From Pocillopora damicornis (lineage: Eukaryota), in assembly GCF_003704095.1 (NCBI RefSeq), contig NW_020847747.1, forward strand, positions 620,001 through 684,000: DNA of 64,000 nucleotides, in the 5' to 3' direction. A model generated the notes under the pieces. It was not told where the DNA came from and did no database searches. It saw only the letters and a list, made by a program, of their open reading frames with translations. Both the position numbers and the translations under genes were made by a program. Shown here one piece after another: positions 5,014 through 62,064 of this stretch (position 1 is the stretch's first letter; each line of letters opens with the position of its first letter).

Positions 5014-8000
5014 TTACTTCTTTGTTTTCTTCTTGACTGGTTTTCCTCCCATGGCTGTCTGTAGTTTTCTCTCAGCTTGTTGTTTGCGCTCGTGTTCGGG
5101 TTTGTTCACATGCTGCTCCAGTTGTGCTTGTTTCTCTTCCAACTTTTTCTTGAACAAGTTCAGTCGCTCCAAACAGTTACTCTTCTGCAGATTAATGGAT
5201 TCCAGCGATGCCTTTGCAGTAGTTATCTTGGTGGTTGTTTGTCGAACAGCATTCTTATGCTGAGCATGCTCCGTGCTGCCCTCCGCTGATTCCCTGAAGA
5301 GGTCTGTTTGAGCCAACAGTTCTTGTTCCAGTTCCCTTAGATTTGCAGTGACATCAAGAGACTGCCTGGAGAGCTGAGCGAATTCCTGGTTCAAGCTGTC
5401 TACAGTGTCTTGCATGTCATTAACTTGAACCTGTAATAAAAGTTCACAAAGTCACTACTTATCAGAATCCCAGAGGTAAAGGTGCTCTTGTCTCGTCACG
5501 AATGAGTTTGGTTAGTTCTCAGACCCTATAAAATATTTCCTCTCTATGTTACATACCAGAGCAAGAAAGGATTTCAATAAGTTGATTTATCTTGCATATC
5601 TGTACATAAGTTACTTTGCACCAGCAGTTTTCCTGATCTCAGGAAAGGAGTTCTCTCATTTTCCCGAAATTCCCCTCCTACACATAGACATCCACAATAA
5701 CGTCAAGTATCCTCAAAGGTCAAAACCCATCTTAGATAAAATATCAAAACACGTCAACATACCTCTAAGAAGGTCTTATAGAGGTCCTCGTCCTCTTTAG
5801 GCTGTGCAGATTTCCCAGATATGGGCAAACGAGTGGCATTGCGTGACAGAGCTTGGGCGCGGGAGACCTGTCGAGACACTCCACGCGACAACAAATTCCC
5901 ACGTGACTGAGCGTACCGTGACACTGGTCTCTCCTTAGCTAGTGGTCCTTGTAGCTCGTGTAATCGTTTATCAATAAATTCTTCTGTGCCTTGAAGACGG
6001 GCGTGGGACGCTTTCTCTTCCACAGCACCAAGGAAAGATCTCAACTTGGACTCGACAGCAAAGTTACTGTACTTGGATAAACGTTCCACAATACCTTCAT
6101 GTGTAAAATGCACGCCATCTTTGTTCGCGCCGCGCAAAAGCTTGACATCCAAAAGTCCATCCACCATATTCGCCTTGTCAGCCTCAGTATGAGCATCACC
6201 AAATACAGACTCCAACAGCACACGGCTGGCGCTTTCCAAATCGTCGCTTGCAGGAAGTGAGGACAGAGTGCGCGCAAGCGCAGAGGAACGCCTATATCGT
6301 GCAAAGAACAAGTCATCGCAAATTACAGCTAGGGCGTGATGGAACTCTTTCATAAATCCCGGATGGGAGTCGTCGCGTAAGTCTCCGCAAGCAATGTGCG
6401 CGAGGCAGTGAACCAGAACCAAAATAAACTCTCCAACGTTGTCCATTCGTTCAGTTCGCACGTACAAGATACGATTGTTTGCGTCGTAGAAGAAGGAATT
6501 CCTGTAAGCGTTCCTCTGTAGATGAGAGTTTGGAGGCAGCTTATCGGCTAGCAAGAGTGTGACAGGAAGATGATGACAATGAACGGCGAGTAAATCGACA
6601 ATGAAAGAGCCAAACTTGTATGTGACGAAGGCTCGAGCAGGCAGCGTGTTCAGATCAACTGGGACAAGTTCATCGTCCCCTGTCCACAAAGTGTCATCCT
6701 TGATGTCAATATAACCTTCACCAGGTGCTGAGAAGCAAGTCAACACCAATACGTTACACAACGTCATTTACTGAGTAACCCTTCTGTACATCATCTTACT
6801 GCAGATATAACTTTTGTATCCCATTACTTTAAATCAAAGGACTCAAACCGCATCTAAGAAAGTCAATCCTACTTGCTAATTTGTTTAACTCTAAAAATTT
6901 TCTACCAGGTACTTTAAAATAACACTGTCCACTTGACATTAGTAAAAATATTGATTTCCACTTACCCGAACCGCCAAACTGTCCTCCTTTACCAGCGCCA
7001 CCACTCACTAACGATTTGATGCTCTCGATCTTTTGGTATAGCGGTGACGCCAGCAGCAGCGATGCCAGTTCACCTTCACTCAATGGAGCTGCTAATCGAT
7101 AACTATCCGGCATTAGTCGCGCTTGCTGTATAGGGGGTGAAGCAGCTTCAGATTCGATTGTAGCAGCTACAAGGTTATCGACATGAATGCTTTCCTTCAA
7201 AGCGATCACCTCTTCAGCTTGTGCTCGATCGCGCTCAGATTGAACTTTCTCTTCAAATTCTTTCTTCTCCTCTTCGTTTCGAGTTGTAAGTTCAGTCACC
7301 TTAGCCTGCCGTTTTGCCTCACGTCTTTTCTTCAAACGCTCTTCCAATGAGCTCTGCATTCTCATTCTATCCGCGTCCATTTTGTTCATCAGTTTAGCCA
7401 AGTCTTTGCTGTGTTCTTTCAATATGGCTTCTTGGTCTTCCTTTGAAGCTCCTTGTTTGCTCATTTTGTCCATTTCTTGTTTGACTTTCGCCTTCTTTTC
7501 CTTCAGCAGGGCTTCTTTACGAGTGTTAAGAGCCAAGATTGCCTTTTCGTTCTTTTTCTGTTCTTCCTCTGCTTCTTGTTCCAGCTGTTTGTCGAACGTC
7601 TTAAGTTCCTCTTCTAACTTAAGTTGTTGCTCGGCTTCAAATGCTAAGTGACAAACAGATGCAAATAAGAGAGGTTTAGGGAAAAATTTATTCATTTGAC
7701 TTAAATGAATTATTGCTCTTCATTGAATTTTTTAGTTAAATTGTTACTAACCATCATTTTCTTGTTTGAGTTTCAGTTCATTCTCCGCTCGCTGTTCATC
7801 TAGTTTTTGTTTAACTATTTCCAGTTCCCTCGCGGCTGCCAGCGCCTTCTCAACTGATCGCCTGTGTTCCTCTGCTTGTTCTGGAGTCAACTCATTCAAA
7901 GCATCAGCATATTCCTAGATGAGGAGAGGAGTAGCATAAATAAGATGAAGAGTTAAGCAAAGAGGGAAATTGAAAAGTTAATAAGGAATACCAGAACGAA

Positions 8001-11000
8001 TCTCTTGATGCGACCACAATATTCCTAGAGCAAACATAAAATTAGGACAACTAAAGCTTTTTCCATCCAAACTCACCTGATAGTGCTTCTCCTTAAGCTC
8101 TAACTTGGCGCGCGCAAAGCGCACTTCCCAGTCTGACTGCACACCATGTTGAATTTGTTTCCTTTGATCAGCGTGTTTTTTATCCAGCGCGCTTTGTCGT
8201 AATTGCTGTTGGTTCAATAACTGGGCCCTCTTCTGCTGCAGCTCTTCAGGATTTAATTTTTGTTTTTCCAGTTCTCTTAATTCTTTCTCGTGTTGAGCCC
8301 GAAGTTCATCGTTTTCTTGCGCATGTCTTTCTTCCATCTTGGCCAGTGCTTCATCAACAGCCACTTTACGTTCTTCCTGAAACATACGCTCCAAGTCTTT
8401 CAGCTCCTGACTTTGACGTTTTTCCAGAACCTGTAAACAGAACAGGTTTGTGTTTTTTTTCTTACTTAATCCACTGAAGTAGCTATCATGTAATCAATAG
8501 TTACCATGACAACAGTTAAATCAGACCCTACAGAGGATGTTACCAGCACGAATTCTATCCAGATTAAAAGAGCAACTATGGCTTAGTCTCAACAACATTT
8601 TCAAGACAGCTAAACAACAAGGTAATTAAACGACCTGTATAACTCCACATTTATTACCTTTCTGATGACAAACTCTGCAGCTTCAGAGCCGTTCTCCCTG
8701 ATCCCGTCAATCATAGCTTGCTTCTCTGCCTCTTTTACCTGACAGTGAAAAATGCATTCGTTTAAAACAAATTGGCACGATCTGTGAGTTAAAATCCGCA
8801 AATGAATGTTAATCAAAAATTGATTTCATTTTACACCGTTGAACTCAGAAACTGAAACATCTGAATTAATCTCTAGCAATATAACACACCACAAAAGAAA
8901 AACTTAAAATTTTCCCCTTTCAACTGAGCACGTGCCACTCACGTGTTGTGTGCGCACTTCTTGCAGTTCTCTCTTCTGCTCCAACAATTCCTTAGCCATC
9001 TCTCTTTCTTGTTTACGCTGCTGTGCTTCTTGTTTTCGTTTCTTTCTTTCCAGTAGCTTCTGATGTAAGTTCGCCTGCTGCCTTTGTTTCTCCAAGTCCA
9101 TCTTTTCCATTATTTCTTCCAGTTCTTGTTGATGTGCCGTCAAAAGCTGGTAGGCAATTAAAACAAAAAAATTATTGTGAATGATTATGGAGAGTGAATG
9201 ACTATTGCTTACACGGTGTTTAAGTCTAACTTATACAGTTTCGATCATTTGCATGAGATGACAATGTATTGCGGAATATCGATTACTTCTCTCCTGGGAA
9301 TTCTGAGCTGATTAAAAGAGAGACTCTTGGCGTACCTGTTGCACTTCTTCAGGTGACATGTCCTTAGAGCGTGCCGCTAACTCAGCAGCATGTCTGTCCT
9401 TCAGCTCTCGCAGTCTACGCTCTTTATCAGCCTCAAGATGTTCCATAGCCTGAGCTTCTTCTGCAGCCAGTTCTCGTTCTAGTTTTTCGTTGACTTTCAG
9501 GGTATCTTGTTCATGTCTATCACGCATATCAGCTAAGGTACGCTCCTGTTCGTTTCGTAACGCCTGAAAATAAAGATGTTTACAGAGATCAGATTCACAG
9601 AGATTAGAAAAAATTCATCAACCATTACTTTTTGAGGTTCAATTTTGTCAATAACTAGTTCGTTCTGCACAGTATATCGGAACTCACTTCTTTAGGGCAG
9701 TGTAGTAAAGTTGCACGAACCTGTTCTTCTGAAGTTTCACGTGGTAATATGACTTCGGGTACGATCACGTGGTCTGCGTCGACTGGCTTGTTAGCTGCGA
9801 TGGCTTGGCTCTGCTCCTCTAAGATCCGCTGAGCAGCTGTTTCCTCTGCCTGCCGGCGCGCTTCTTCTTGACGACGCGCTCGACGAGCAGCAAGTTTTGC
9901 CTAAGAGGTAGAAATCAGTGTCAATGCCATTTTCAGTTTGTATGGTCCTACGACAAGTGTCATTGTGTTTTGCCTTAATAACTAACAGTCGCGGTCCCAC
10001 CCTCAAGTGATAAGCATCAATGGTACAGTTGAATAATCCAGTTATTTCGAGGAACCATGTTACCTTGGTGTCCTCCAAGGATTTGAGTTTTCGTTGTTCC
10101 AAGTGTTCTAACAGCGCTTCGTTCTCCTTCCTGAACTGATCCATAATCTGTTGTTGGAGAACCGCGTCCAAATTGTCTTTTGTGGCCTATGTGAAACAAA
10201 AACCAAAATAAAAAAAATAAAAAAAAACAGGATAATCCAATTCAATCTACTGAAGATGACAAAAATGCAAAATAATAACAGATATCCTGTTTGAGATGAC
10301 AACTAATGTTTATGTTTAAGAACCTGTTTGATTTTTAAGCTCACTTTATCAAGAAGTTCTTTGTGGACTTGCTGCACGTTTTGCATATGCGACTCATTGA
10401 GTTTCTTGGTGATCTCTGCAATATCACGCGCCTCCTCTGCCTCAAAGCTTGTTTCCAGAGCAGCTATTTCCTGCTCGTGTTGCTTCAGCAAAGCTGTCAC
10501 ATCACCACCTTCGCTTATAACCTGAAGTGAAAGTCACATGAAACGATAAGGAACAGAAACATTTTACACCAGCGTCCAGTTATCTAAAAGCACCAAAAGT
10601 AGATGACCATCTCCAGCAATGCTCAGTTTACCTTGGCTTTCTCCATCTCCTGTTGTTCCCTGAGTTTCTTCAGTCGTTCTTTCTTTCTCTGGGCCAATTT
10701 CTCCCTAATAAGCGCCGTCTGCCGTGCCTGCTGTTGAGCCAGGTCACGTGACATTTTCTCCTCGAGTTCCATTTGTTCACGTTTAATTTGCTCAGCTTGA
10801 TCAGCGTACAGAGAACCAGATGCAACAAGATCATCCTGAAATAAAACAAGAATTTAAGTTTCTTACCCAGCAGCAAGTACATACACGACAAAACTTTGCG
10901 AAAGAAAACAATTATAAAATTTCAAGTGTATTCTTATATTGACGATTCTCTTACCACCATAGCGCAGAATTTGTCTCCCAACTGGCGTCGGTAAACATTC

Positions 11001-12935
11001 GCCTGTTCGGTGGATTGTTGTTCCTCTGCTCGCGCATGTCCAATAGATTCTTCCTGAACAATCACGTCTTGTACACTTTCTTGCGTCTTCAACACTGTAT
11101 CAATACTGGCCAGAGGTTTCACATCATCCAAATGAATTTTGGACTTCTCGGCCTGTGAAGACAAGGAAAATTGTTAAACATCACTCTTTTTATTGTTATC
11201 TTTTGCCACAAAATTACTCGTACCTCCTCCTTCTGTTTTCTTAAGAGGGCGGCCTCTTTTTCCTCTCTTCTCCTCTTCAGCTTCTCTCTCAATGCTGCCA
11301 TTTGTTTCTCTTTCTCAGATGCCAACATTCCTTCTAACTGGACAACTTGTCTTGCATGATCCTCCATAACCGCTCGCATTTCATCTTCACTGAGATCACC
11401 AGACAATTTGTCTGCTAACTTCTCCGCTAACTTTTTCATTTCGCCCGAACGGATTTCTTCCTGTTAATGAACATATGCTTCCACATTAGAAGCAAAACTC
11501 TCACAAAGTTGATTCTGTTTGTAGTTTGTTTATTAATACCAATTGCAGCCACGAGGCTGGATTACAGGTACAGCTGTTGAAGTTCTAAACCTCACTTTCT
11601 CAGGAACGTAGAATAAGTTACATGGGTGACGAAGTTCATTCGTTTTATTAGCAGTGATGTAACAATCAGGCTTCCAAAAAAGCCAAAAACTGGAACGTGA
11701 ATTCATAACTTTTAACCATTAGGAAAATTACCACAAAATGAACGCTGTTCCTGGACAACGTGAAATGGAACTAAAAAACCTGTCATGTTAACTCCAGTGT
11801 ATCTGGTCCCTTATTAAAAAGGAAAATGTCATGAGGACTCAGAGGAAATGCATGTTAATAAAATATAAGATTCTTTCTTTTTCCTGCTTTAAGCCAAACC
11901 TGTTCTTTCAGAAGCTTGTGTACAGCAGTCTCCTCTTCTCGTCCAGTCTGCTGCTCAAGGTGCATGCGCTCTGCATTCATTTTCCGAAGGAACTCACTAA
12001 CGTCACTCGTTCCTTGGATCTGCCACTGCGGCCCAGCAGCCTCACCAGCGTGTACCTCCACCACAGGATACCCAGAAGCTTGTTGGGTGTAGGTAGTAGT
12101 TATTGTGCTGCTATCTCCACCCATCACAATCATTCCAGGCCCTGGTACTGTTATGCTTGTGCCCGACACCACACCTGTGTGACAAATAAAACGTATTTGT
12201 CACTGGTTTTAGAGACGATGGAGAGGACGAGAGACAATACAACAAGAAGTTAAGTTTGCAATTAGGAAAATTCCATTGAGCCGTGTTACCTGGCATTGAA
12301 AATTGTCCCTTTTCGACTTTCTCCAACAGTAGCTGGAGAGACTGCATCAGCTCCTCTTCTCTCACCTGTCCACCAGCTGTCATACCGTATCTCGTGCCGT
12401 GTTCACCAGCCTCACTTGTTTGCTGCTGTTCAGTGGAGGCCTGCAACCGATCATCATCACTTAACACATAACAATTTCAACCTTCAATAATTGTAAAAAT
12501 TACATAAAAATTATGGTTATCTAAGGTAATTGAGAGCAGGCCACAACCTACATACCTCGCCTTCCTTGACCCTTCCTGCCTCTTTGGTTGCTTTGATAAG
12601 TGCAGAGACGTCCATGCTATCTAACATCCCTTTGAGCTTCTCTGCCTGTTGGCTGATTCTGTCATAAAATGCTCTCAAGTCTGCTTGGTGACGCGCTAGT
12701 TGTGACGAAACGTGTAACGTTTGATCTTCCAATTTGTCATATAGTGTACGAACGTTGAAGTTTTCCAGCTCAAATCTTACACTTGGAGAATCAAACGACG
12801 ACCCTTCTGGTGAACCACGTGGTCCAAGGTCATAAATATGATCATCAATACCTAACATAAAATAAATCAGTAATAACGATGAGTTACAAACTCTTTTGCG
12901 AGCCTCAACAAACAAAACCATAGAAGGATACTTAC
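5014..12935 (-). other. Cytoplasmic tail of the giant protein (about 1,650 aa): long E/K/Q/R-rich coiled coil, a globular domain (exon 6727-5763) and a terminal coiled coil ending KPVKKKTKK
   Basis: Translation of the spliced exons after the TM. The ORF-track fragments at 5014-11439 are these exons. Confidence 0.8.
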
Positions 12936-15563: not shown

Positions 15564-15598
<35 letters not shown>

Positions 15599-51500: not shown

Positions 51501-54500
51501 AACTAAAACCCCCAGAAAAAGGCACAAAGAGAAAAATAGAAGAAAAAGAAGAGTTTGGCTGATAACCTGAGTATAATTTACAGATATAATGTATAGCCAT
51601 AAACTAAAATATATTACCAATCAAAAAATTATTTACAAAGTCAGTACAGATTGAATATATAACCAATATGTAAACTATAATAAATAAAACCTGAATGTGC
51701 AAATTCAGATTCACCAGGTTTTCTGGCAAGAATAACAAATTTTGAGATATTTACAAACATTGCTACTAAATCCTGCTACCAACCATATCAATAAACGAAA
51801 ACATGAATGATATGAACATTTCAAAATGAACTGTTGAAAAATCTGATGACATAGCCAGCATATCCTTGTATTGTGTAAGAATATGATTTAATGGTGTAGA
51901 AATCATACTAAGAAACTCACGAAAAACCTACCAATATCAACAGATAATATAAATGCAGTATGCAGTCATCACATTTACTGGAATACAGCACAGAAAAGTC
52001 AAAATGTAAAGAAGAACAAACAAATGCATGGATGAAGGATTCTTAGAGCAGATGGTAACTTCATCTGTTACCAACTGGCCATCTTTATCATAAGAATGAA
52101 GAATAGATGAAGATGCCAATGGAAAGTTAGGTGGTATTAGTCAACTGTAGATGTTGCTTGTATCCCATGAATGAGTGACCAGATCAATGCATGGATTGAT
52201 AAATTGCAATAGCCTCACCTATGACCCTCTGGACACAAAATACAATATCGAGCACCAGTTGTGTTACTGTATGTTCCATTAGCACATTCTTCTGGTGCTT
52301 CCATTCCAACACTTGGACACTGGAAGCCAGCTGGACACACTTTACAATCACTCAGACTTTCAGCATCTGAGTAAGTCCCATTAGAGCATAGAAAATATGT
52401 AGAAAGTCCTTTAGTTGGACATGAAGCTCCCTTGGGACAAGGTTGACATTCAGTGCTCCCTGCTGCAGTATATGAACCAGCTGAACATTCCACAGGAGCT
52501 GTTTTATTCAGACAACTAAAATCACAAGGAATAAACATTAAGAAATAGAATCGAATAAAATGTGGAGTTTGGCTTATAACCACAGCACTACAGATGCATA
52601 ACCAAAAGCTATAAATTTGCAAATGAAAATGTGTTTAATTTTAAAGTGAGTTTCTAAGTGAAGCTGATGGTTTACACTGATCCTTTTCATAAAAGATACA
52701 ATAACCAAATCACATCACAAACAAAACTTTCCAATTATGTTATTAACAGACTAGTGAATAACTGAGTGTCATAACTTTATTCTGAAGCAACAACAAGTGC
52801 ATCCATGGAAGAAACTGTATTCTTTTATAAAAACATGTTCTCTATCTCTTTCCTAATTGTTGACAATAACTAACATGCTTCTTTCGAATATCCCAAATGA
52901 GAAGATGAGATGATGCCCCATATGGATGACAAAAAACATATCTGACTCTCCAGCATGCATGAATATTTACTATGACTGAGAATTATATATAAAAGGTAGG
53001 GTCACTTAAAAGTATTCTGGTGTCCAATCAAAACATGTATACATATATTCTAAATGTTACATACATGACCATGATCAGTTTGGTAAAAGTTAAAATTTGC
53101 CCAATCTCAATGCTACATACATGATTTTTTTTTTTAATAGAGAAATCTTGTGTATAAACAAACCCTCACCTATGACCCTCTGGACACAAAATACAATATC
53201 GAGCACCAGTTGTGTTACTGTATGTTCCATTAGCACATTCTTCTGGTGCTTCCATTCCAACACTTGGACACTGGAAGCCAGCTGGACACACTTTACAATC
53301 ACTCAGACTTTCAGCATCTGAGTAAGTTCCATTTGAACATAGTACATATGTAGAAAGCCCTTTGGTTGGACATGAAGCTCCTTTGGGACATGGTTGACAT
53401 TCAATGCTCCCTGATGCAGCATATGAACCAGCTGAACATTCCACAGGAGCTGTTTTATTTGGGCAACTGAAATGGCCANNNNNNNNNNNNNNNNNNNNNN
53501 NNNNNNNNNNNNNNNNNNNNNNNNNNNNNNNNNNNNNNNNNNNNNNNNNNNNNNNNNNNNNNNNNNNNNNNNNNNNNNGATGATGATGATGATGATGCTG
53601 ATGATGATGATGAGAAAAATAATGACGATGATGAGGACGACAATGACAACGAATCATAAGTTGATAATGTCTTGATGTGGATCAATCACATGAAAGGAAG
53701 TGCTCATTAAAGGCCCAACAGCTCACCTATGACCCTCTGGACACAAAATACAATATCGAGCACCAGTTGTGTTACTGTATGTTCCATCAGCACATTCTTC
53801 TGGTGCTTCCATTCCAACACTTGGACACTGGAAGCCAGCTGGACACACTTTACAATCACTCAGACTGTCAGCATCTGAGTAAGTTCCATTTGAACATAGC
53901 ACATATGTAGAAAGTCCTTTGGTTGGACATGAAGCTCCTTTGGGACAAGGTTGACATTTAATGCTCCCTGCTGCAGCATACAAACCAGCTAAACATTCCT
54001 CTGGAGCTGTTTTATTTGGGCAACTGAAATGGCCAGGTATTGAGATTTGTCATAAAATTGTTTAAAAAAATGTATCTGTGAATTTAGTCAACACTTGCAA
54101 GTGGTGCTTCATTGGTGAAATTAGATGTTTAGTGAGGTGATAGGTTTCTTGGTCATGATCTTCTGTGCCAACACAAAGAATTTGCATGTGGTTCTTTGGT
54201 AGAGGTACATCAGAGATGGTGCCCTGAACTTTACAAAACCATGAGTGCATCTAACTGCCCAATGTTAAAAGCCATCCAAAGAATATAGAAAACTGGATTG
54301 ATTATTGGAAGATTAGTTAAAGGTAACAACCTTATCATAAAGACCAACAAGAATGATGCTAATTAATAACACAGTGGTATGCATTGGTGCTGGTGTGATG
54401 AACTCCACATACTGACATATGTCTCCAAGTGAAAGGTGTATTGTTGTTTTCTGTTCTGAAAAGGTGGCATCTGTGAACTGTATGTGTTGATTGCACCATG

Positions 54501-57500
54501 AATATGTATGAATGACCAGATCAATGCATGGATAAATGCATGGATTGACTATTGCATTAACCTTACCTATGACCCTCTGGACACAAAATACAATATCGAG
54601 CACCAGTTGTGTTACTGTATGTTCCATTAGCACATTCTTCTGGTGCTTCCATTCCAACACTTGGACACTGGAAGCCAGCTGGACACTGTTTACAATCACT
54701 CAGACTTTCAGCATTTGAATAAGTTCCGTTTGTACATAGTACATATGTAGAAAGTCCTTTGGTTGGACATGAAGCTCTTTTGGGACAAGGTTGACATTCA
54801 GTGCTCCCTGTTGCAGCATACGAACCAGCTGAACATTCCACAGGAGCTGTTTTATTTGGGCAACTGAAATGGCCAGGTTTGGGAGTAATAATGAAGTTGT
54901 TCAAACACATGTATTTGTGAACTCAGCCAACAAGTGCCAGTAGTGCTTCACTGATGTAGTTAAAAAAGTATTAAAGTGACATGCTCCTAGATGAAGATGC
55001 TCTGTGCAAGCTGAAGTGTCTTTAAATAACTTGTATGAGGTTAGTTAACAGCTCAGGTGATGATATATTTTGAGGAAGAAAACAAGTGATAGTTAACTGA
55101 AGTTATAAAAACATCTGTGGTGCATTCCACAGCCTTTAAAGTGGTGCTTATTACAGATCTACATGAGAATTCCAACAAGCCACGATAACACTTTACCATT
55201 ACATGAAGGATGAGGTGCAGTTTTACAATGACTTTAATTAATTGTGCCTACAGCAGGTTCTCTAGAGCAATATTAGGATGCTGCAACAGTTATAAGATGC
55301 TGTGCTTTAACACACTAACATAATACGACACAAGTTGCATTTATAAGTTTCTAAACTACTTTGAGTATCATCACACTGTAATGATTAATTAATCAATTAT
55401 TATAACTAGTACGCTCCTACATTGTACAAATAAAATGAAACAAATTTTTCTAGTTCAAGTCATTTTCCGTGTTCCTGTTGAAAAGTAAGAGAGGATGCTA
55501 ATTTTCATTTGCACCTCATAACAGCTAAGAAGCCCTTCATTTGAACTAGCTCCACAGAAACTAAAAGAAGTAACCCCAACCTTCTTACCTGTATCCTGCT
55601 GGACAAATGGTACACTGAGTAGAGCCAGTGAGGCTAAAGGTTCCATTTTCACAAGGGACTGGCGAGACAGCAGGATTTAGGCACTTGAATCCTTCTGGAC
55701 ATTGGCTACATGTATCCTGTCCTTCTGAATCGGCATATGTTCCATTACGGCAAGGAACATGAGTGGATAGTTGAGCTGAAGGGCAATGTGATCCAGCTGG
55801 ACACTGAGAGCAAACAAGACTCCCACTTGGTGCATATGTCTTTGCCTCACATGGAATTGGGTCTGAGCCCTTTTTAGGACACCTGTGGCATGAACACATG
55901 AAAAAGCATATTGAAAATGAATGCTTACTTTAATGCACAAACATTATGCTGCATTCATCTATTCACAACTTTAGTGAAGAAAAACCAGTGCGGACCATGA
56001 GTTCGTATCCCTTAGCACTCTACAAAGGAGACCAAAATCTCAAACTTGATGGAAGCACATTGTTTTCTATGCATCAGTTATTGAAATACAAATGAAACCA
56101 ATACTTAGCAATGCGGACTCTGGTGTTTGTGAACCAACTGACCCTCTGCCCATGCCCCTTAAAATTTTAATGATGGCAGCTAACTATTTGATGTCTCTTT
56201 ACACATCATCAGAACATAGGGTAGCTAACTAGTGAGCACATAATAGGACCTCTTGTTGCAACGATTAGATCCCCCCTGATGAAGGCACTAGACAGGAGTG
56301 TTGAAATGTTTAAAATCTGCCATAGTCTACCTGAATCCTGCTGGACACATGGTACAGTTTGTAGCAGCACCTTTGCTGTAAGTTCCATTTTCACAGGGCA
56401 CTGGGGCTAGAGAAGGATTCTGACAAATGAATCCAGCTGGACATTCTAAACACTTGGTGAGTGATGTAACATTAGCATAAGACCCAGGACCACATGGAAC
56501 ATGTTTCTCTGAGGCATTAGCTGGACAGTGAGACCCCAAAGGACATTCCTGGCACTCAATGCTCCTCGATGGAGCAAAGGATCCTTGATAACATGGAATT
56601 GGGTCAGCTGAATTGTCTGTGCACCTTTAAAAGAAATGCATCAATCAAACTTTTGCTCCTGGTGCATATTCATCTACCAAATACTATTGTTAGGCATAGC
56701 CATCAAATTCATGTTTACCACCATTATTCACTTCTAATACACAATAGTAAATAAATGTAGAAAGCTTATTAAAACTTACCACCAAGGAGATCATTACACT
56801 GATAATGTATTTGCCAGAATATTGATCATGTAATGACTGATTTTCTCCTCCCCTCCCCCCCCCCTTCCCCCCCTCTTGCCTCAGCATGTGCATGCACACC
56901 CAAGCTTAACTCACACAAACAAACCCTGATAATAATGGAATTTCAAGGTGAAAGGGTATTTGACATCCACAAAGAAAGTACTACAATGAATTCCTTACTT
57001 GTGGCCACTTGGACACACTATACAGTGGGTAGCTCCAGCTTTACTGTAAGTTCCATTCTGGCATTCCACTGGTTCTTCAGCAGGATTTGGACATTTAAAA
57101 CCTGGCATACATTCTAAACAGCGTGTAGCATTCTTCACAACCGAATAAGACCCATTCGCACAAGGGAGATGATAAGGAAGCTTCTCGGATGGACAATGTG
57201 AACCAATAGGACAGGAATGACAAAAGATACTATGTGCTGGAGCAAAAGTACCATTTGTGCAAGGGATTGGATCATCTGAGTTCACAGGACATCTAGAAAA
57301 TAAAATTTAGGTAGGAATATTATTCATTCCTATCACAAAGGCTTTTCATTTGTACAGACCCAGAATGACATGGTACATGCATTTGTGATAATCAAATACT
57401 TACTGATGGCCTTCAGGGCAAATGGTACACTCTGTTGCCCCACCCTTACTATATGTCCCATTTGGACAATCCTCAGGTGGCTGAGCAGGATTTGAACATT

Positions 57501-60500
57501 TTTTACCAGCTGGACAGCTCTGACAAATACTTTGATTTACACTGTCTGTGAAAGTGCCATTAACACAAGGGAGATATACTGAAAGGCCTGATGATGGACA
57601 GTGAGATCCCACTGGACAGGACTGACAGTGTAAACTCCCTGATGGAGCATAATTACCAGCTGGACATTCAGATGGATCAGTACTTGGGTCAGCACAACTG
57701 CAATATCACATAAATTGGATAATTCAATAACTTATTAAATACAATGAATTATTGCACTTTGACTTTGGTGACTGGCTATACCTGAACCTTTACACACTAA
57801 ACTACGTATGCAAATTTTCCATGTAGTTCTCTATAAATTTCCTATAGTACTGCAGAGGAGACTGTCTAACAATCAAGGGCTTCTTGAGTTTTCCATCATA
57901 TCATTTATTTTTGTGACCTTTATATGTAATTAAGGGGTAATACTGTTGGATTACTGTTGATACTTCTGGGATAATGAGTAAAGCATTTACTTATCGATGA
58001 TGAAGCTTATTTGTTCAATACATAAAACTTTATTCATCAGAACAAAGCAGACATTGCACTTATTTCAACGATATGACATAACTTACCTGTGTCCACCTGG
58101 ACACTCTGTACAGACAGTTGAGCCATTCTTACTGTATGTTCCATTCTCACAAGGCTGCTCCCCTTGAGAAGCAAAGGGACAAAAATGTCCTGCTGTGCAC
58201 AACTGGCATTGTGTTTGCCCAACAGTGTCTGTGTAGGTACCATTGAAACAAGGCAAAGGACTTGCTAAGGAAACATTTGGACAATAAAATCCTTTATCAC
58301 ATTGTAAACAAGAAGTTTGCCCTGCAGCAGCATATTCTCCAGGATTACATCTAACTGGCACAACTGTTTGGTTGGAACATCTGTTAAAAAAAGCAATATA
58401 AGAGTTACACTTGCTCTCATTTAGCTTCTTTGTATATTAGAGTGGTAACTCTGAAATGGAAAACTTAAATTGCTGTCTGATATGTCTTCATAGATGTACA
58501 TGCAAGTAGGGGACACACACTGTTCACATTTAGGTGTATCCACATTAATGGACATCTATAAATGATATGTACTATCACTTTTGTCCAATTAAGGTTTGTT
58601 ACTTCATCCTTGAAAACATGGACTGATAATTCTCTCTGCTTGAAAAACAGCTATGAACTTGTACTCAAGATATTCTGTCTTACATTGAAGAAGAAGTGCT
58701 ATTCAATGTATTCCTAAATAATTTTGTAGTAATAACAAGACTCACTGATTTCCAGGTGGACAAACAGTACATTCTGCTGCTGCTCCAAGACTATAGCTTC
58801 CACTGGCACATGATTGACAAGATGTACCATTATATGAGAATGTTCCTGGCTCACAGACTGAGCAGTTTGATTGCAAAAGACTTGGTTCATAACCTCCAGG
58901 GCAATACTAAGAAAACAAAAAAAATCACCTAATTTTGCCTACTGATATTATTGTGTGGGAGACAGCACAAGATTTTATACATTCATGTTAACCATGAAAG
59001 TTGTTCCTTATTTTGGATAAGCACAGATGGCATGGAATACATGTCATGGTTAAAATATTACCTTAGATTTATATCTATCTGACAGCACAAGTTTAATTTT
59101 TTCTTTCTCTTTAGGGATTATTAATAATTATACCTTGAACAAAAGAAACTATCAATCAAACTGGTTTGTAAAATTCAACACCAGCTAAAAATTTAAACCA
59201 CAACATGTTCATTCCATAAAAACATATTTTTTTTTTTTAATTTCACTGCTTTTATTTGACTCTGTAAGTTGTACCTTTGGTCAATTGTATATCCAAGAAA
59301 TTAATCATTGACAATAACCTTACTTTGATTTATTAATAATTTAAATGAAATTTAGTCTGTACCTGAGGTTGCTGAGTAGGATCCAAGCACACTCTCCCAG
59401 TAGGACAAGAGTGACAGATTCCTTCTCCATAATTAGAATATGTTCCAACAGGACACAAAGTGATATTTCCAGCTAAAGTACAGTTGTAACCAGCAGGACA
59501 AGGTGTAGTGCATGCTACTGAACCTGCTGTGCTGTTTGTTCCCGATACACAAGCCTATTAAAGACAGCCACATCAGTTTTTCTCATTTCATTAACAAAAT
59601 TTTTTTTAAGGAGGAAGGAGATGAGAAAAGATATCAGTTAAATTGTTTGACAGTTTGCACTAAATTCTCAAGGCTAAAATTATATGAAATGTATGGCAAT
59701 CAGAGTAAAGAATTAACATGCTTTAGGACTGAAACAGTTAATGCTCGAAGCTTAGTTGTCTCTGTCTTCTCCTTCCTGCATTAATTCGATTCATTAGATG
59801 AAGACTACTTTACCATCACCACAGGTATTAATTTCTAATCAGTGACTAGGCCCACATTGAATATAGATGTGGCTGCAAAGTAACTTTAAGTTTGCACGAG
59901 GCTACCTGGTAAAGTCAAATTTCTATGCTGCATGCTTTGAAAAATGGTGAAAATAAAGTTAACAAATAAAGAAACTACAAGGTTGACTTTCCTATTCTAC
60001 TAAAAACCTGATATAATATTACAAAATCCCGATAAAAGAAAGCTGAATGTCTAAACGTACTTTAGCTAATCATCATTTTCTAGGTTCAGTTCATAATTTC
60101 CAACAGTTGGGGTTGCGATGAGAAATGTTTAGGATAAAAGCTTCGAGATGGAAAGAAACCTAAATGATCAAACTTACCGTACAATCGGATGAGTTTTTTG
60201 AACCGGTATTCGGATTTTCGGTTCCCGCTGGACAGGGCTCAGGGGCAGTACTGTTTCCCAGGCAGCTAAAATAAAGTTATAATATCATTAGCTTTAAAGA
60301 AACCTCTTATCCAATTGAGATAAAAACAATATATTCTGCAACCACTTTTAATATCAAAACAACGTGAGATGAAAGTATCCAAGTAAGTGTAACAGAAGGT
60401 TCAAGCCGATAGACAACCCCCAACAGTTAATATAAATTCTGTATGTATAATCTCGAGTCCTTTGGCAAAACATCTGGATCCTGGATATTCCTATGTATCG

Positions 60501-60875
60501 GTACAATAGTGAGTACAGGTCACGGGAAGATTTGTTACTTACAAGTGTCCAGCAGGACAGTCAACACAGTTACTACAGACCCAATATTGTCCAGCAGTAC
60601 AATTGCTTTGACTACAGGAACATTCTGTCCCACAATCACAAGCTGCTCGAGCTAGACCTAAGCAAGAGAACACAAAAGTTAAACATCCAAGATTTCTGTA
60701 AAGTCATTTCCTTAAACGCCACAATAGAAAAGCGCATCTGAAATGATAATGACATGTATGTGATTATGATCTTACCGGTGAAGCTCACAAAAATCAAGCC
60801 AAATATTACGATAAGATTCAACCGCAGTTTCCCGCTCTGAGATGTGTGACATTTTAGCATCGCTAAATTACTCAT
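5014..60875 (-). CDS. Giant type I membrane protein with Cys-rich GCC2/GCC3 (ephrin-receptor-like) repeats, about 87 exons, about 9,100 aa
   Basis: Manual splicing gives a continuous frame with GT-AG boundaries and matching phases. First exons: 60875-60776, 60657-60543, 60265-60178, 59554-59363, 58906-58746. Twelve symmetric exons follow (58380-49095), then many CPxGxYC exons including large ones (31945-30746, 25393-22430), the juxtamembrane exon 14256-13411, the TM exon 13122-12936, coiled-coil exons down to about 6966, exon 6727-5763 and last exon 5430-5014 (TAA). No in-frame stop was met. Confidence 0.85.
13027..13101 (-). other. Single transmembrane helix WAVIWGMIVFMLVCIIMLVIAVIIW
   Basis: 25 hydrophobic residues followed by RPK (positive-inside), consistent with type I topology given the N-terminal signal peptide. 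Confidence 0.9.
13819..13833 (-). other. Polybasic proprotein-convertase (furin-type) site RRRRR
   Basis: VVT-RRRRR-AVGD followed by a Thr-rich linker, about 140 aa N-terminal of the TM. Fits R-X-K/R-R. Confidence 0.65.
15295..15673 (-). mobile_element. tRNA-derived SINE (Nin-domain-like) in an intron
   Basis: Minus strand begins with a tRNA-like head (degenerate A box ...CTCATGTTGTAGAGC, B box GGTTCAAGCC), then CAACACTCAGGGTCTTAAAATAACTGAGGAG and a TCTTCTCGGA...GGACGAAGAACCG core like cnidarian Nin-SINEs (recalled). The 3' end is approximate. Confidence 0.7.
28333..28366. repeat. Perfect 12-bp inverted repeat with 10-nt loop (intronic hairpin)
   Basis: AAGTGTGACTTG (28333-28344) / CAAGTCACACTT (28355-28366). 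Confidence 0.7.
35964..36174. mobile_element. TTAA-flanked MITE (piggyBac-type ends), 203 bp
   Basis: TTAA|CCCTTTAAC...GTTAAAGGG|TTAA: terminal inverted repeats plus TTAA target duplication (35964-35967, 36171-36174). Confidence 0.85.
39410..40198 (+). mobile_element. Probable non-autonomous Crypton-like (tyrosine recombinase) element remnant
   Basis: Decayed coding fragment NTKRK...VALVMAFLTAENENGQLEDLPQADSSHVPERFLLWVRTK resembles the N-terminal core-binding region of Crypton/DUF3504-associated recombinases (recalled). The element ends in an imperfect palindrome of about 150 bp (40050-40198). Confidence 0.5.
40779..41000. mobile_element. Palindromic interspersed repeat with arms of about 55 bp (40779-40833 / 40885-40939) and a decayed minimal-hammerhead-like core
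   Basis: The arms are imperfect reverse complements. The loop on - reads ATGGCAAAGGACTAATGCTTGAAATGTCAG, compatible with CpG-decayed CTGACGAAGGGCTAACGCTCGAAACGTCAG. Confidence 0.55.
53479..53578. other. Assembly gap (100 N) of unknown true size
   Basis: Run of N inside the tandem exon array. Confidence 0.99.
53579..53650 (+). repeat. (GAT)n microsatellite, degenerating to GAC/AAT
   Basis: GATGATGATGAT... directly abutting the gap. Confidence 0.9.
55589..58380 (-). repeat. Five older paralogous 294-nt phase 2-2 exons (58380-58087, 57697-57404, 57292-56999, 56624-56331, 55882-55589)
   Basis: Identical length and Cys spacing, diverged sequence, and no obvious homology between their introns. 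Confidence 0.9.
57783..57946. mobile_element. Degenerate, truncated MITE related to TTAACCCTTT-ended elements
   Basis: Starts AACCTTTACACACTAAAC..GTATGCAAATTTTCCAT and resembles an abundant coral MITE family (recalled). No intact right end. Confidence 0.4.
60640..60875 (-). other. Signal peptide of the giant protein (split by intron 60775-60658)
   Basis: MSNLAMLKCHTSQSGKLRLNLIVIFGLIFVSFT/GLARA-ACDC: basic n-region, hydrophobic core and A-x-A cleavage motif. The start could be ATG 60875 or 60860. Confidence 0.8.
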
Positions 60876-61228
60876 ATTAATGCTTGTTCTGTTGAGTGTT
60901 TTAGGGAGACAGGAACCTCGATGAGCGGTAATATAAATCGGTCACAGAAGTTGCTGTCTGCAGAAATTCCAGCTGCACTCAGTTGAACGTTTGTAAAATG
61001 ACATGTTGAACTCGAAGCATTCGAACAGCGTTCTAAATAAAATAAGAAGTCACCAGACTTCCTCCAAACAATGCGCGGTATCAAACTTCAAAATTCGACG
61101 TTAATAGTGTACCGAAGTCCGAGTATCCGCGATTATGTTATGAAATGTTCCACCGTGATTAGAGAAAAATTCCACAATGTTTTGTCATGAAAATTTGGTT
61201 CTTGCGGAAGATCACGTTGATTACTCTC

Positions 61229-61319
61229 CGTGACGTCACGTCTAAGATGTTGTCATGGAAGCCATCAGTTTGTTTGTGACAAACTTTCCGCAAGTTTCGC
61301 TAGGCTACGTGAGGATTGG
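61229..61319. promoter_or_regulatory. Candidate proximal promoter of the giant gene: CRE, X-box-like site, CCAAT box
   Basis: CGTGACGTCACG palindrome (61229-61240), GTTGTCATGGAAGC (61249-61262) and ATTGG (61315-61319), in a CpG-rich stretch about 350-450 bp upstream of the ATG. Confidence 0.55.
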
Positions 61320-62050: not shown

Positions 62051-62064
62051 GTTGCCAAGGCAAC
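62051..62064. promoter_or_regulatory. RFX X-box GTTGCCAAGGCAAC
   Basis: Two perfect GTTGCC half sites with a 2-nt spacer (consensus GTTGCCATGGCAAC), just upstream of a putative non-coding first exon with a possible donor near 62134. Confidence 0.75.

What the first reader, a model, noticed from the sequence alone, without database searches (positions are those of the whole stretch)
5014..60875. One giant (about 9,100 aa) single-pass receptor or filament-like protein hidden in dozens of ORF fragments
Seen: all minus-strand fragments splice into one frame: signal peptide, about 7,400 aa ectodomain, furin site, TM, and about 1,650 aa tail. Known: GCC2/GCC3-type Cys repeats occur in SCUBE/ELAPOR/Eph ectodomains, in apicomplexan and ciliate cysteine-repeat modular proteins, and in the algal mastigoneme protein MST1. 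I know no characterised animal protein with this complete architecture. Inference: together with the RFX motifs upstream, this is a candidate ciliary/flagellar surface filament, tether or mechanosensory antenna anchored by a long cytoplasmic coiled coil. It is the best candidate for an undescribed system here, and automated annotation would probably split it.
Basis: partly seen in the sequence, partly recalled or inferred. Interest (0 to 1): 0.85.

Follow-up and report, generated by a model that had tools for sequence, protein, structure and literature searches.

The report
Giant conserved coral surface-filament membrane protein
The minus-strand fragments form one expressed 88-exon coral gene for a protein of about 9,150 residues that crosses the membrane once, and it belongs to an ancient eukaryotic family that nobody has characterised.

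Summary
A GT-AG exon chain, constrained by RNA junctions, gives 88 exons and 27,453 coding bases, or 9,150 aa. The order is signal peptide, an ectodomain of about 7,380 aa, one transmembrane helix and a 1,704-aa tail. The ectodomain has 807 Cys in about 140 Ephrin_rec_like modules and carries RRRRR 148 residues before the membrane.

RNA contigs from four studies show 13 consecutive GT..AG introns across the weakest part of the chain. A cDNA contig from a related coral covers the last 2,150 residues in one alignment. Homologues from six phyla are colinear with window 36.4-5.0 kb. The N gap lies in an intron, 12 nt before an intact acceptor, inside a recently amplified exon array, so copies may be hidden there.

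Homologues with the same layout occur in flagellated protists (Bodo, Percolomonas, Fabomonas, Chromosphaera) and many animals. Vertebrates have a short form, si:dkey-103g5.4. Every named homologue is 'uncharacterized'.

Two new points come from structure prediction. The polybasic site sits in a disordered loop inside a cupredoxin-like juxtamembrane domain. The tail domain has a Wss1/minigluzincin-like fold with HxxxH but never the catalytic Glu.

A ciliary role is unproven. The support is one perfect X-box 1.2 kb upstream and a flagellate-only list of named homologues.

The parts
5014..60875 (-). Coding span of the giant gene: 88 exons, 27,453 coding bases, 9,150 codons plus stop
   Evidence: Splice-aware chain with RNA-confirmed junctions fixed; all 87 introns are GT..AG, median 262 nt, maximum 1,431 nt
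60776..60875 (-). Exon 1: ATG and the start of the signal peptide. The hydrophobic core continues into exon 2 (60657-60543), with an AxA cleavage motif (LARA|A) followed at once by Cys repeats
   Evidence: Read from the sequence and hydropathy of the model. No RNA check of this exon
55589..58380 (-). Five 294-nt exons, phase 2-2, each coding 12 Cys (two modules of about 49 aa); 55-64% identical to one another in DNA
   Evidence: Pfam PF07699 E 5e-10 to 7e-09
49095..54863 (-). Seven 297-nt exons, phase 2-2, 89-96% identical in DNA, some with similar introns: a recent tandem amplification of an exon-intron unit, all copies open
   Evidence: Pfam PF07699 E 9e-10
53479..53578 (.). Assembly gap, inside an intron of the amplified array, directly after a (CAT)n run and 12 nt before the acceptor of exon 53466-53170
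   Evidence: Further repeat units could be hidden here. Any such unit would stay in frame because all units are phase 2-2
40246..47459 (-). Fourteen exons joined by 13 introns seen in RNA contigs of 4 runs from 4 studies
   Evidence: Joints with CT..AC ends on the plus strand. The loose ends at 41196 and 46911 match 40479-40508 and 47349-47378 exactly. One contig is 11,750 nt long
22430..25393 (-). Largest exon, 2,964 nt (988 aa), 10% Cys and 13% Gly
   Evidence: aligns to echinoderm, hemichordate and amphioxus homologues at 36-40% identity
13411..14256 (-). Juxtamembrane exon (282 aa): small Cys-rich part and beta region, then a cupredoxin-like sandwich interrupted by a disordered loop that carries RRRRR (13819-13833)
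   Evidence: AlphaFold2 pLDDT 87.7, pTM 0.84, loop 139-154 below 50. Cupredoxins are the top matches: pseudoazurin Z 7.3 over model residues 106-277; plastocyanin Foldseek probability 1.0. The polybasic motif is kept in invertebrate homologues
13027..13101 (-). The only transmembrane helix (WAVIWGMIVFMLVCIIMLVIAVIIW), followed by the conserved cytoplasmic motif WRPxxxGxxPxxxxxPKYxSLGAP
   Evidence: aligned with 6 homologues from 4 phyla (echinoderm, hemichordate, cephalochordate, annelid)
6966..12425 (-). Exons of the charged helical tail (45-62% E/K/R/Q/D over residues about 7740-8640)
   Evidence: Exons match a related coral's cDNA-derived protein P0174. From 10.8 kb downwards they are the only parts alignable to its genomic locus L001
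5763..6727 (-). Tail-domain exon (321 aa): zincin-like fold with HCLAH (6396-6410) and an invariant Asp; no catalytic Glu
   Evidence: 565 homologues. H106, H110 and D119 are invariant, and the residue after the first His is never Glu in 37 sequences. Wss1 Z 7.5, abylysin 7.5, SPRTN 6.6; selecase and jannalysin by Foldseek
5014..5430 (-). Last exon: C-terminal helical segment with a Lys-rich end, and the stop codon at 5014-5016
   Evidence: The same end is seen in P0174
62051..62064 (.). Perfect palindromic X-box-type site GTTGCCAAGGCAAC, 1.18 kb upstream of the ATG. A weaker site, GCTTCCATGACAAC, lies at 61249-61262 next to a TGACGTCA palindrome
   Evidence: 2 sites in the window against 0.15 matches expected; the other site lies inside a coding exon

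Best explanation
This is one expressed gene for a 9,150-residue type I membrane protein. It belongs to an old, uncharacterised eukaryotic family.

Shown:
- The exon chain, its expression, and the order of the parts.
- The same layout in homologues from protists to animals.

Inferred:
- About 140 six-Cys modules of the Ephrin-receptor/TNFR type form a stiff, glycosylated disulfide-ladder rod. It would project some 0.4-0.5 micrometres from the cell surface if extended.
- A furin-type convertase cuts the exposed RRRRR loop. This loop interrupts a cupredoxin-like sandwich, so strands from both fragments build one domain. The rod would then stay attached without a covalent bond, making a joint that force could pull apart, as in mucin SEA domains, Notch or fibrocystin.
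- Inside the cell, a conserved submembrane motif, about 900 residues of charged helix, and a catalytically dead zincin-like domain (HxxxH plus Asp, no Glu) tie the protein to an unknown partner.

On this reading the protein is a surface filament, tether or force sensor. Which membrane domain it occupies is open.
For: One gene:
- 88 GT..AG exons with no intron longer than 1.43 kb.
- RNA joints across 13 introns in 4 runs from 4 studies, in contigs of at least 11.75 kb.
- RNA runs hold 0.53-0.68 of the words of a stretch whose exon share is about 0.70.
- P0174, from an intron-free 9.2-kb cDNA contig of a related coral, aligns to model residues 7001-9150 in a single HSP at 72% identity.
- Homologues from six phyla are colinear with the window from 36.4 kb to 5.0 kb.
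- DNA similarity to the related coral's locus is confined to the modelled exons.

Layout and family:
- A single TM helix, a signal peptide, 807 Cys and 196 N-glycosylation sequons.
- The same layout (signal peptide where the N-terminus is complete, Cys-rich ectodomain, TM, long tail, tail domain) in Fabomonas, Chromosphaera (two genes), Bodo and unnamed protists. Percolomonas also has a giant homologue of 4,786 aa; its layout was not examined.

Cleavage joint:
- Confident juxtamembrane model with a disordered polybasic loop.
- The cupredoxin match spans both sides of that loop.
- The polybasic motif is kept in cnidarian, annelid, echinoderm, hemichordate and amphioxus homologues.

Rod:
- MST1 modules like the Eph-receptor Cys-rich domain form a disulfide ladder with about 11 Angstrom spacing (PMC10602792).

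Dead zincin.
Against: - No protein-level data exist. Cleavage, extension, glycosylation and partners are all inferred.
- Most invertebrate homologues have xRRRLL, which lacks the P4 Arg of the furin consensus. Vertebrate short forms have no polybasic loop at all.
- The fold matches are middling (Z 6.5-7.5, Foldseek E 0.004-0.08), a range in which unrelated folds also appear.
- The 5' 13 kb of the chain, including the signal-peptide exon, rests on sequence logic alone.
- The RNA contigs also contain chimeric joints between repeats, so the lengths of long contigs must be read with care.
Confidence: 0.5

Rival explanations
1. One reading: the protein sits on cilia or flagella as a surface filament, tether or mechanosensory antenna, is switched on by RFX factors, and dates back to the ciliated ancestor of eukaryotes. 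This refines the location within the best explanation; it does not contradict it.
For: There is a perfect palindromic X-box at 62051-62064 (the pattern is expected 0.15 times per 64 kb) and none in 138 kb of other loci. All named protist homologues come from flagellated organisms: Bodo saltans, Percolomonas, Fabomonas, Diphylleia (that these four are flagellates is general knowledge) and Chromosphaera. Flagellated cells are documented for Chromosphaera in bioRxiv 10.1101/2024.03.25.586530. The Chlamydomonas ciliary hair protein MST1 uses similar Cys modules.
Against: The X-box is 1.18 kb from the ATG, the transcription start is unknown, and the conservation of the site was not tested. The tandem paralogue has no X-box. 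Only a small, unsystematic sample of the 565 homologues could be named. No mammal or bird appeared among the named vertebrates, which a core ciliary part would not predict. The gene is found in ordinary adult coral polyA RNA, which gives no cell type. No ciliary targeting motif is conserved in the tail.
Confidence: 0.25
2. It is a ligand-binding signalling receptor of the Notch type. Binding or pulling removes the ectodomain, further cuts follow, and the long tail or its zincin-like domain is released to act inside the cell.
For: A polybasic cut site lies close to the membrane within a folded domain. The TM helix and submembrane motif are very conserved across phyla, which suggests contacts within the membrane. 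Eph-receptor and TNFR-type modules bind ligands in other proteins.
Against: No known signalling domain or nuclear localisation feature was found in the tail exons. A 7,000-residue ectodomain with recently amplified, near-identical exons looks structural rather than ligand-specific. A 1,700-residue tail made mostly of charged helix is unlike released signalling fragments.
Confidence: 0.12
3. It is a passive surface coat or adhesion protein (glycocalyx, apical matrix, cell-substrate or cell-cell glue) with no force-sensing joint. The basic loop would be a maturation or shedding site only.
For: The ectodomain is huge, glycosylated and repetitive, and its repeat number is changing fast. This fits coat proteins such as membrane mucins. 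Vertebrate members keep the tail but have only about 450 ectodomain residues and no polybasic loop, so the joint is not essential to the family.
Against: A passive coat would not need a 1,700-residue tail whose end domain is conserved from Discoba to animals, nor a TM helix conserved across phyla.
Confidence: 0.15
4. The locus holds two or more genes, or a decaying gene, and the single frame is a product of chaining symmetric exons.
For: Many exons share a phase (2-2, 0-0, 1-1), so they would chain in frame by construction. Exons from 60.9 to 47.5 kb have no RNA check. The gap could hide a rearrangement. The first automatic chain contained a false exon at 42463-42413.
Against: No intron exceeds 1.43 kb, so there is no room for a terminator plus a promoter. 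RNA joins the weakest stretch. Every array exon keeps all 12 Cys and an open frame. Full-length protist homologues have the same layout, with a signal peptide followed directly by Cys modules.
Confidence: 0.06

Closest known systems
Uncharacterised orthologues: LOC117121631 (Anneissia japonica), LOC144439946 (Glandiceps talaboti), LOC117306372 (Asterias rubens), and teleost si:dkey-103g5.4
   Same: They share the juxtamembrane domain, the TM helix, the submembrane motif, the charged helical tail and the tail domain, and they are colinear with the window. The tail domain is 45-60% identical in invertebrates.
   Different: All are only predicted and unnamed. The animal models of 3,985-6,496 aa lack the signal peptide and the N-terminal third seen here. 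The vertebrate form has about 450 ectodomain residues and no polybasic loop.
Fibrocystin (PKHD1) and membrane mucins with SEA domains; Notch S1 cleavage
   Same: These work alike on the proposed reading: a giant single-pass ectodomain is cut near the membrane, and the fragments stay together without a covalent bond. This comparison rests on general knowledge.
   Different: There is no sequence or domain relation. No IPT/TIG, PbH1, SEA, EGF or LNR modules were found in the exons scanned. Here the cut loop lies in a cupredoxin-like domain, and the tail is 1,700 residues long rather than short.
Chlamydomonas mastigoneme protein MST1
   Same: It has tandem Cys-rich modules like the Eph-receptor Cys-rich domain. 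These form a rod with a disulfide ladder on the ciliary surface (PMC10602792).
   Different: The paper's abstract and structure text describe MST1 as Ig-like domains plus a polyproline-II helix that polymerise into a filament; that it has no TM helix of its own is from general knowledge. Here Cys content is 10-12.7% in every 300-residue bin of the ectodomain, so there is no room for a block of Ig domains. This protein also has its own TM helix and tail.
Apicomplexan and ciliate cysteine-repeat modular proteins (CRMPs); ELAPOR1/2, SCUBE, Eph receptors
   Same: They contain Ephrin_rec_like (GCC2/GCC3) modules, Pfam PF07699.
   Different: CRMPs cross the membrane several times (general knowledge), whereas this protein has one TM helix. 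ELAPOR, SCUBE and Eph proteins have a few such modules plus other domains (MRH, CUB/EGF, kinase) that are not seen here, and they are 10-20 times smaller.
Wss1/SprT (SPRTN) proteases and archaeal minigluzincins (selecase, abylysin, jannalysin)
   Same: They have the same minimal zincin fold over tail-domain residues 22-143, and the HxxxH motif lies on the equivalent helix.
   Different: The catalytic Glu of HExxH is absent in all 37 aligned members. There is no sequence-level match to any Pfam family or PDB chain. The domain here is fused to a giant membrane protein.

Membership tests
Proteins with Ephrin_rec_like / GCC2_GCC3 repeats (Pfam PF07699) | Match to PF07699 above the gathering score (23.1 bits) | tested here: met
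   Exons 57403-57705 (35.8 bits), 53726-54049 (38.7), 58087-58379 (39.5), 45702-46334 (27.3), 41156-41629 (24.9) and 30645-31973 (23.2). Many other exons score just below the threshold.
Uncharacterised giant family (si:dkey-103g5.4 / LOC117121631-like) | C-terminal tail domain with invariant H..H..D, plus the conserved juxtamembrane domain and a single TM helix, in that order | tested here: met
   565 hits, 52 below 1e-30; motif; colinear chains to 6 homologues; juxtamembrane and TM alignment.
Cysteine-repeat modular proteins (CRMPs) of Apicomplexa and ciliates | Several transmembrane helices after the Cys-repeat ectodomain | tested here: not met
   Hydropathy of the model finds only the signal peptide and one TM segment.
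Mastigoneme protein MST1 | Block of Ig-like domains and a polyproline-II helix; no TM helix of its own | tested here: not met
   Every 300-residue bin of the ectodomain has 10-12.7% Cys, and one TM helix plus a long tail are present. No Ig family was found in the 20 pieces of the Cys-rich region scanned. Not every exon was scanned.
Eph receptor tyrosine kinases | Ephrin-binding domain, fibronectin III repeats and a cytoplasmic kinase domain | tested here: not met
   No such Pfam hits in the ectodomain or tail exons. The tail is charged helix plus a zincin-like domain.
Zincin metallopeptidases (Wss1/SprT, minigluzincins) | HExxH with the catalytic Glu, plus a third metal ligand | tested here: not met
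   The fold is similar (Z 6.6-7.5). However, the residue after the first His is C, S, T, A, I or V in all 37 sequences. H106, H110 and D119 are invariant. So this is filed as a likely inactive relative, not a protease.
Cupredoxins (blue copper proteins) | Type 1 copper ligands: His, then Cys-x(n)-His-x(n)-Met in the C-terminal loop | tested here: not met
   Fold match: pseudoazurin Z 7.3, plastocyanin Foldseek probability 1.0. The sequence after the last conserved Cys (VSCGGVTISPTTKG) has no His or Met pattern. The two nearly invariant Cys (C167, C260) more likely pair with each other.
Proprotein-convertase substrates | R-x-[K/R]-R in an exposed loop of a secretory-pathway protein | tested here: met
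   TRRRRRAV lies in a loop with pLDDT below 50, and GRRRRRRAV is present in the related coral. Other invertebrates have xRRRLL without the P4 Arg. Actual cleavage is not testable with these tools.
RFX-controlled ciliary genes | X-box close to the transcription start, conserved in orthologues, and expression in ciliated cells | tested here: inconclusive
   A perfect X-box lies 1.18 kb upstream of the ATG. The transcription start is unknown, the orthologous promoters could not be fetched, the paralogue has no X-box, and no cell-type data were available.

The most novel reading that the evidence does not exclude
The family is a lost-from-model-organisms component of the ancestral eukaryotic flagellar surface. 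On this reading it is a half-micrometre disulfide-ladder filament anchored through the ciliary membrane. Its cupredoxin-like, convertase-cut joint acts as a force-sensitive link, and its dead-zincin tail domain docks on the axoneme or transport machinery. The family would have been kept from Discoba to corals and shortened in vertebrates.
Probability: 0.2. Interest if true: 0.85.

Novelty: new variant of a known kind. Interest (0 to 1): 0.6.

Why it matters
Giant single-pass surface proteins that are cut near the membrane, such as mucins, Notch, fibrocystin and adhesion receptors, are central to how cells feel force and contact. This locus belongs to a family of that general kind that reaches from kinetoplastid and heterolobosean flagellates to corals, echinoderms and fish. 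It has no name, no Pfam model for its two signature domains, and no paper that these searches could find. A likely reason is that no insect, nematode, mammal or bird appeared among the homologues that could be named.

The work here provides:
- a full-length, RNA-supported animal model;
- two testable structural ideas, a cut loop inside a cupredoxin-like domain and an inactive zincin fold as the cytoplasmic end piece;
- tractable systems for testing: zebrafish si:dkey-103g5.4, Nematostella and sea urchin.

It also shows that current automated models of the orthologues lack the N-terminal part. If the ciliary reading holds, the family would add an ancestral surface component of the eukaryotic flagellum.

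Tried and rejected
- EVC2/limbin-like tail was my first guess. No Pfam hit in any tail exon, so I dropped it.
- Tandem Repeats Finder found nothing in 44-60 kb because the unit of about 1 kb exceeds its longest period of 500. Pairwise exon comparison was used instead.
- The first automatic gene chain gave 8,752 aa. It placed a false exon at 42463-42413, set wrong ends for two exons, and missed several tail exons. RNA joints and retraining corrected it.
- ESM Atlas: the juxtamembrane exon gave only unnamed eukaryote clusters, and the tail domain gave phage 'hypothetical' clusters at scores of 0.91-0.92 with low shared-feature counts. Neither was used.
- A profile search of the tail domain against PDB sequences and Pfam gave only coiled-coil noise.
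- Paper searches found nothing on this family: GCC2/GCC3 terms, the zebrafish gene name, and the Chromosphaera gene ids in the main text and supplements.
- Earlier findings of the scan: none, by place or by words.
- The X-box pattern is absent from 510-620 kb of the contig, which includes the paralogue.
- RNA contigs show joints inside exons between distant repeats (41251 to 46622, 41229 to 14939, 46642 to 19412). I read these as assembly chimeras, not splicing, because they lack splice-site ends and the one listed in the joint table has only 21 letters on one side.
- No tRNA genes in the window.
- Plus-strand ORFs opposite the exons have no family hits.
- The joined protein model was analysed only in local scripts. 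It was never sent to a search or folding tool; all searches used single exons by reference. The N gap was not filled or looked up.

Full report
WHAT IS THERE

The window is animal-like DNA with 35-45% GC. Stop-free stretches on the minus strand add up to 20,680 aa, against 13,558 aa on the plus strand. From 59.5 kb down to 14.5 kb the minus-strand stretches are 9-13% Cys with the recurring pattern CPxGxYC. Pfam finds Ephrin_rec_like (PF07699), with weaker TNFR-type hits, in exon after exon.

Below 14.3 kb the content changes:
- an exon with RRRRR;
- an exon with one strongly hydrophobic helix;
- many E/K/R/Q-rich exons;
- a 321-aa globular exon;
- a final helical exon.

THE GENE MODEL

I chained exons with a simple splice-aware dynamic program that scored codon log-odds, GT/AG sites and frame continuity. 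The first run gave 8,752 aa. After retraining on the tail exons and fixing the RNA-confirmed junctions, the model has 88 exons, all GT..AG, and 27,453 coding bases. That is 9,150 aa, from ATG 60875 to the stop at 5014-5016. The median intron is 262 nt and the longest is 1,431 nt, so nowhere is there room for a terminator and a new promoter.

The model has only two hydrophobic segments. One is an N-terminal signal peptide...LIFVSFTGLARA|A, followed directly by Cys modules. The other is a TM helix at residues 7422-7446. Other features are as follows:
- The ectodomain holds 807 Cys, at 10-12.7% in every 300-residue bin up to residue 7200, and 196 N-glycosylation sequons.
- RRRRR is at 7274-7278.
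- The tail is 1,704 aa.

The joined model was analysed only in scripts. Every database search and fold prediction used single exons by reference.

THE GAP

The N run at 53479-53578 follows a (CAT)n tract and ends 12 nt before the acceptor tttcag|TTGCCC of exon 53466-53170. It therefore lies in an intron.

It sits inside an array of seven 297-nt exons (54863-49095). These are 89-96% identical in DNA, are all open, and each keeps 12 Cys. Five older 294-nt exons, 55-64% identical, precede them. All twelve exons are phase 2-2. Any unit hidden in the gap would stay in frame, and exon skipping could give shorter isoforms.

IS IT ONE TRANSCRIBED GENE?

Expression. Twelve RNA runs from coral and marine metatranscriptome studies hold 0.53-0.68 of the sampled words of window 22400-32000. 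The exon share of that stretch is about 0.70.

Splice joints. I laid four RNA runs from four studies on 41150-47100, the part with the weakest coding scores and so the likeliest place for a gene boundary. All four runs show most of the same minus-strand GT..AG joints, and each joint is seen in at least three. These link 46908-46822, 46684-46457, 46310-46026, 45742-45554, 45303-45053, 44838-44742, 44431-44308, 43997-43801, 43535-43410, 43258-43061 and 41629-41199. The loose ends at both sides match the next exons exactly, at 47349-47378 and 40479-40508. One contig is 11,750 nt long, and all but its first 1,176 nt lie downstream of the laid stretch.

Related coral. P0174 is a 2,397-aa protein read from an intron-free 9.2-kb cDNA contig (L015). 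It aligns to model residues 7001-9150 in one HSP at 72% identity and ends at the same stop. DNA similarity to that lineage's genomic locus L001 is limited to my exons: 12 of 13 HSPs are at least 91% exonic.

Other phyla. Predicted proteins from crinoids, a sea star, a sea urchin, an acorn worm, amphioxus and an annelid are colinear with the window from 36.4 kb to 5.0 kb.

What remains unchecked by RNA is the joining of exons from 60.9 to 47.5 kb, and the direct joints from 40.2 to 16.2 kb.

Some RNA contigs also jump between distant repeat exons at non-splice positions. I read these as assembly chimeras.

THE FAMILY

A phmmer search of the tail-domain exon against 1.84 billion proteins gave 565 hits, 52 of them below 1e-30. 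The domain was always near the C-terminus, and many of the proteins are giant.

Named members:
- Animals: Anneissia, Antedon, Asterias, Diadema, Glandiceps, Saccoglossus, Branchiostoma, Owenia and Dreissena.
- Vertebrates: teleosts (si:dkey-103g5.4, about 1,750-1,800 aa), a frog, a lungfish, lizards, turtles and a ray.
- Protists: Fabomonas (7,499 aa), Chromosphaera (7,076 and 6,410 aa), Diphylleia, Percolomonas (4,786 aa) and Bodo saltans (7,807 aa).

All carry names such as 'uncharacterized protein', apart from a few evident mis-annotations.

The protist proteins show the full layout: signal peptide, 3,100-5,350 residues at 10-12% Cys, one TM helix, then a Cys-poor tail of 1,500-2,750 residues. 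The animal database models start inside the repeats without a signal peptide, so they are cut short. Vertebrates keep about 450 ectodomain residues plus the tail.

This genome has a second, tandem member about 60 kb downstream on the same strand.

The assembly is 234.35 Mb in 4,393 contigs, and the RNA holders are coral samples. From memory that size fits the Pocillopora damicornis assembly, but I could not verify the species.

THE JUXTAMEMBRANE DOMAIN

AlphaFold2 with a 19-sequence alignment gives a confident single unit (pLDDT 87.7, pTM 0.84). Only residues 139-154, the RRRRR loop, are disordered.

Both fold searches put cupredoxins on top. VIA gives pseudoazurin Z 7.3 (rmsd 2.9, 98 aligned) and plastocyanin Z 6.5. 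Foldseek gives plastocyanin at probability 1.0 and E 0.004. The match runs from model residue 106 to 277, on both sides of the loop. The copper ligand pattern is absent.

A cut in the loop would therefore leave strands of the outer fragment built into a sandwich that belongs mostly to the membrane-bound fragment. The polybasic motif is kept in cnidarian, annelid, echinoderm, hemichordate and amphioxus homologues, mostly as xRRRLL. It is canonical R-R-R-R only in the two corals, and it is missing in vertebrates. The TM helix and the following WRPxxAGIYPMKxWKPKYRxLGAP motif are strikingly conserved.

THE TAIL

Residues about 7740-8640 are 45-62% E/K/R/Q/D, about 20% hydrophobic, and show no clear 3.5-residue periodicity. 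The region is helical and very charged, but coiled coil and single alpha-helix cannot be told apart here.

The tail domain has no Pfam or PDB sequence match. Its model (pLDDT above 90 for residues 11-140) matches minimal zincins:
- Wss1, Z 7.5 in two species;
- abylysin, Z 7.5;
- jannalysin and selecase, Z 7.1;
- SPRTN, Z 6.6.

H106, H110 and D119 are invariant, but the residue after the first His is never Glu in 37 sequences. I read this as a metal-binding or purely structural, catalytically dead zincin fold. The Z values are middling, so the fold assignment is likely rather than certain.

HOW IT PROBABLY WORKS

Each module of about 49 residues has six Cys. In MST1, similar modules form a disulfide ladder with about 11 Angstrom between bonds (PMC10602792). 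By that spacing, about 400 disulfides give a rod of 0.4-0.5 micrometres. This is an inference.

The rod would be cut at the basic loop in the secretory pathway and stay attached through the shared cupredoxin-like sandwich. That joint could give way under load. The tail would then link the membrane stub to an unknown internal partner through the charged helix and the dead zincin domain.

THE CILIARY QUESTION

There is one perfect palindromic X-box, GTTGCCAAGGCAAC, at 62051-62064, 1.18 kb upstream of the ATG. A one-mismatch site lies at 61249-61262 beside a TGACGTCA palindrome. The strict pattern is expected 0.15 times per window and is absent from 138 kb of other loci, including the paralogue's surroundings. 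The second match in the window lies inside a coding exon.

All named protist members are from flagellated lineages (for Chromosphaera). However, the sample of names is small, and no mammal or bird turned up. There are no cell-type data. I put the ciliary location at about one in four.

COMPARISON AND NOVELTY

By function, the nearest known things are fibrocystin, SEA-domain mucins and Notch, which are cut but still tethered giant ectodomains. By module type, they are MST1, the CRMPs, ELAPOR, SCUBE and Eph receptors. Membership in each of these fails on a defining feature; see the membership table.

The protein does belong to a real, wide, unnamed family already present in databases as predictions. 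What is new here:
- the full-length, RNA-supported animal model;
- the tandem amplification;
- the two fold assignments;
- the idea of a cut loop inside a cupredoxin-like domain.

Noticed in passing
G000:C4382:522600-565000 (loci L003, L005-L009), about 60 kb downstream of the window's gene, minus strand: A second giant family member lies in tandem. Its tail domain is at 522.6-523.2 kb (51% identical), its juxtamembrane domain is at 535.6-535.9 kb, and about 5,600 aa of Cys-rich open stretches lie between 535 and 565 kb. No X-box pattern occurs anywhere in 510-620 kb.
   Followed up: partly
window 4132-4476 (+): This is the last exon of a paired-like homeobox gene (homeodomain helix 3, WFQNRRAK, plus an OAR motif). 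It converges on the giant gene and ends about 540 nt from the giant gene's stop codon.
   Followed up: partly
window 49095-54863: Seven 297-nt exons are 89-96% identical in DNA, some with similar introns, so an exon-intron unit has been amplified recently. All are phase 2-2, so copy number could vary between individuals and isoforms. The assembly gap may hide more units.
   Followed up: yes
window 41229, 41251, 46622, 46642 joined to 14939 and 19412 in RNA contigs: RNA contigs of three runs contain joints inside exons between distant Cys-repeat exons. None lies at an exon-intron boundary. The one joint listed in the joints table (41251 to 46622) has AG..GG ends and only 21 letters on one side. 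These are probably assembly chimeras through shared repeat words. Very long exon-skipping events were not excluded.
   Followed up: partly
window 35629-35642: A second perfect X-box-type palindrome (GTTACCATAGTAAC) lies inside coding exon 35691-35497. It is probably a coincidence of coding sequence.
   Followed up: no
window 15424-15631 and L001:9168-9374: This non-exonic stretch is 75% identical to an intronic place in the related coral's locus, but at a non-corresponding position. It is probably a shared repeat element.
   Followed up: no
window 61225-61240: A TGACGTCA (CRE-type) palindrome lies about 360 nt upstream of the ATG, next to the weak X-box-like site.
   Followed up: no
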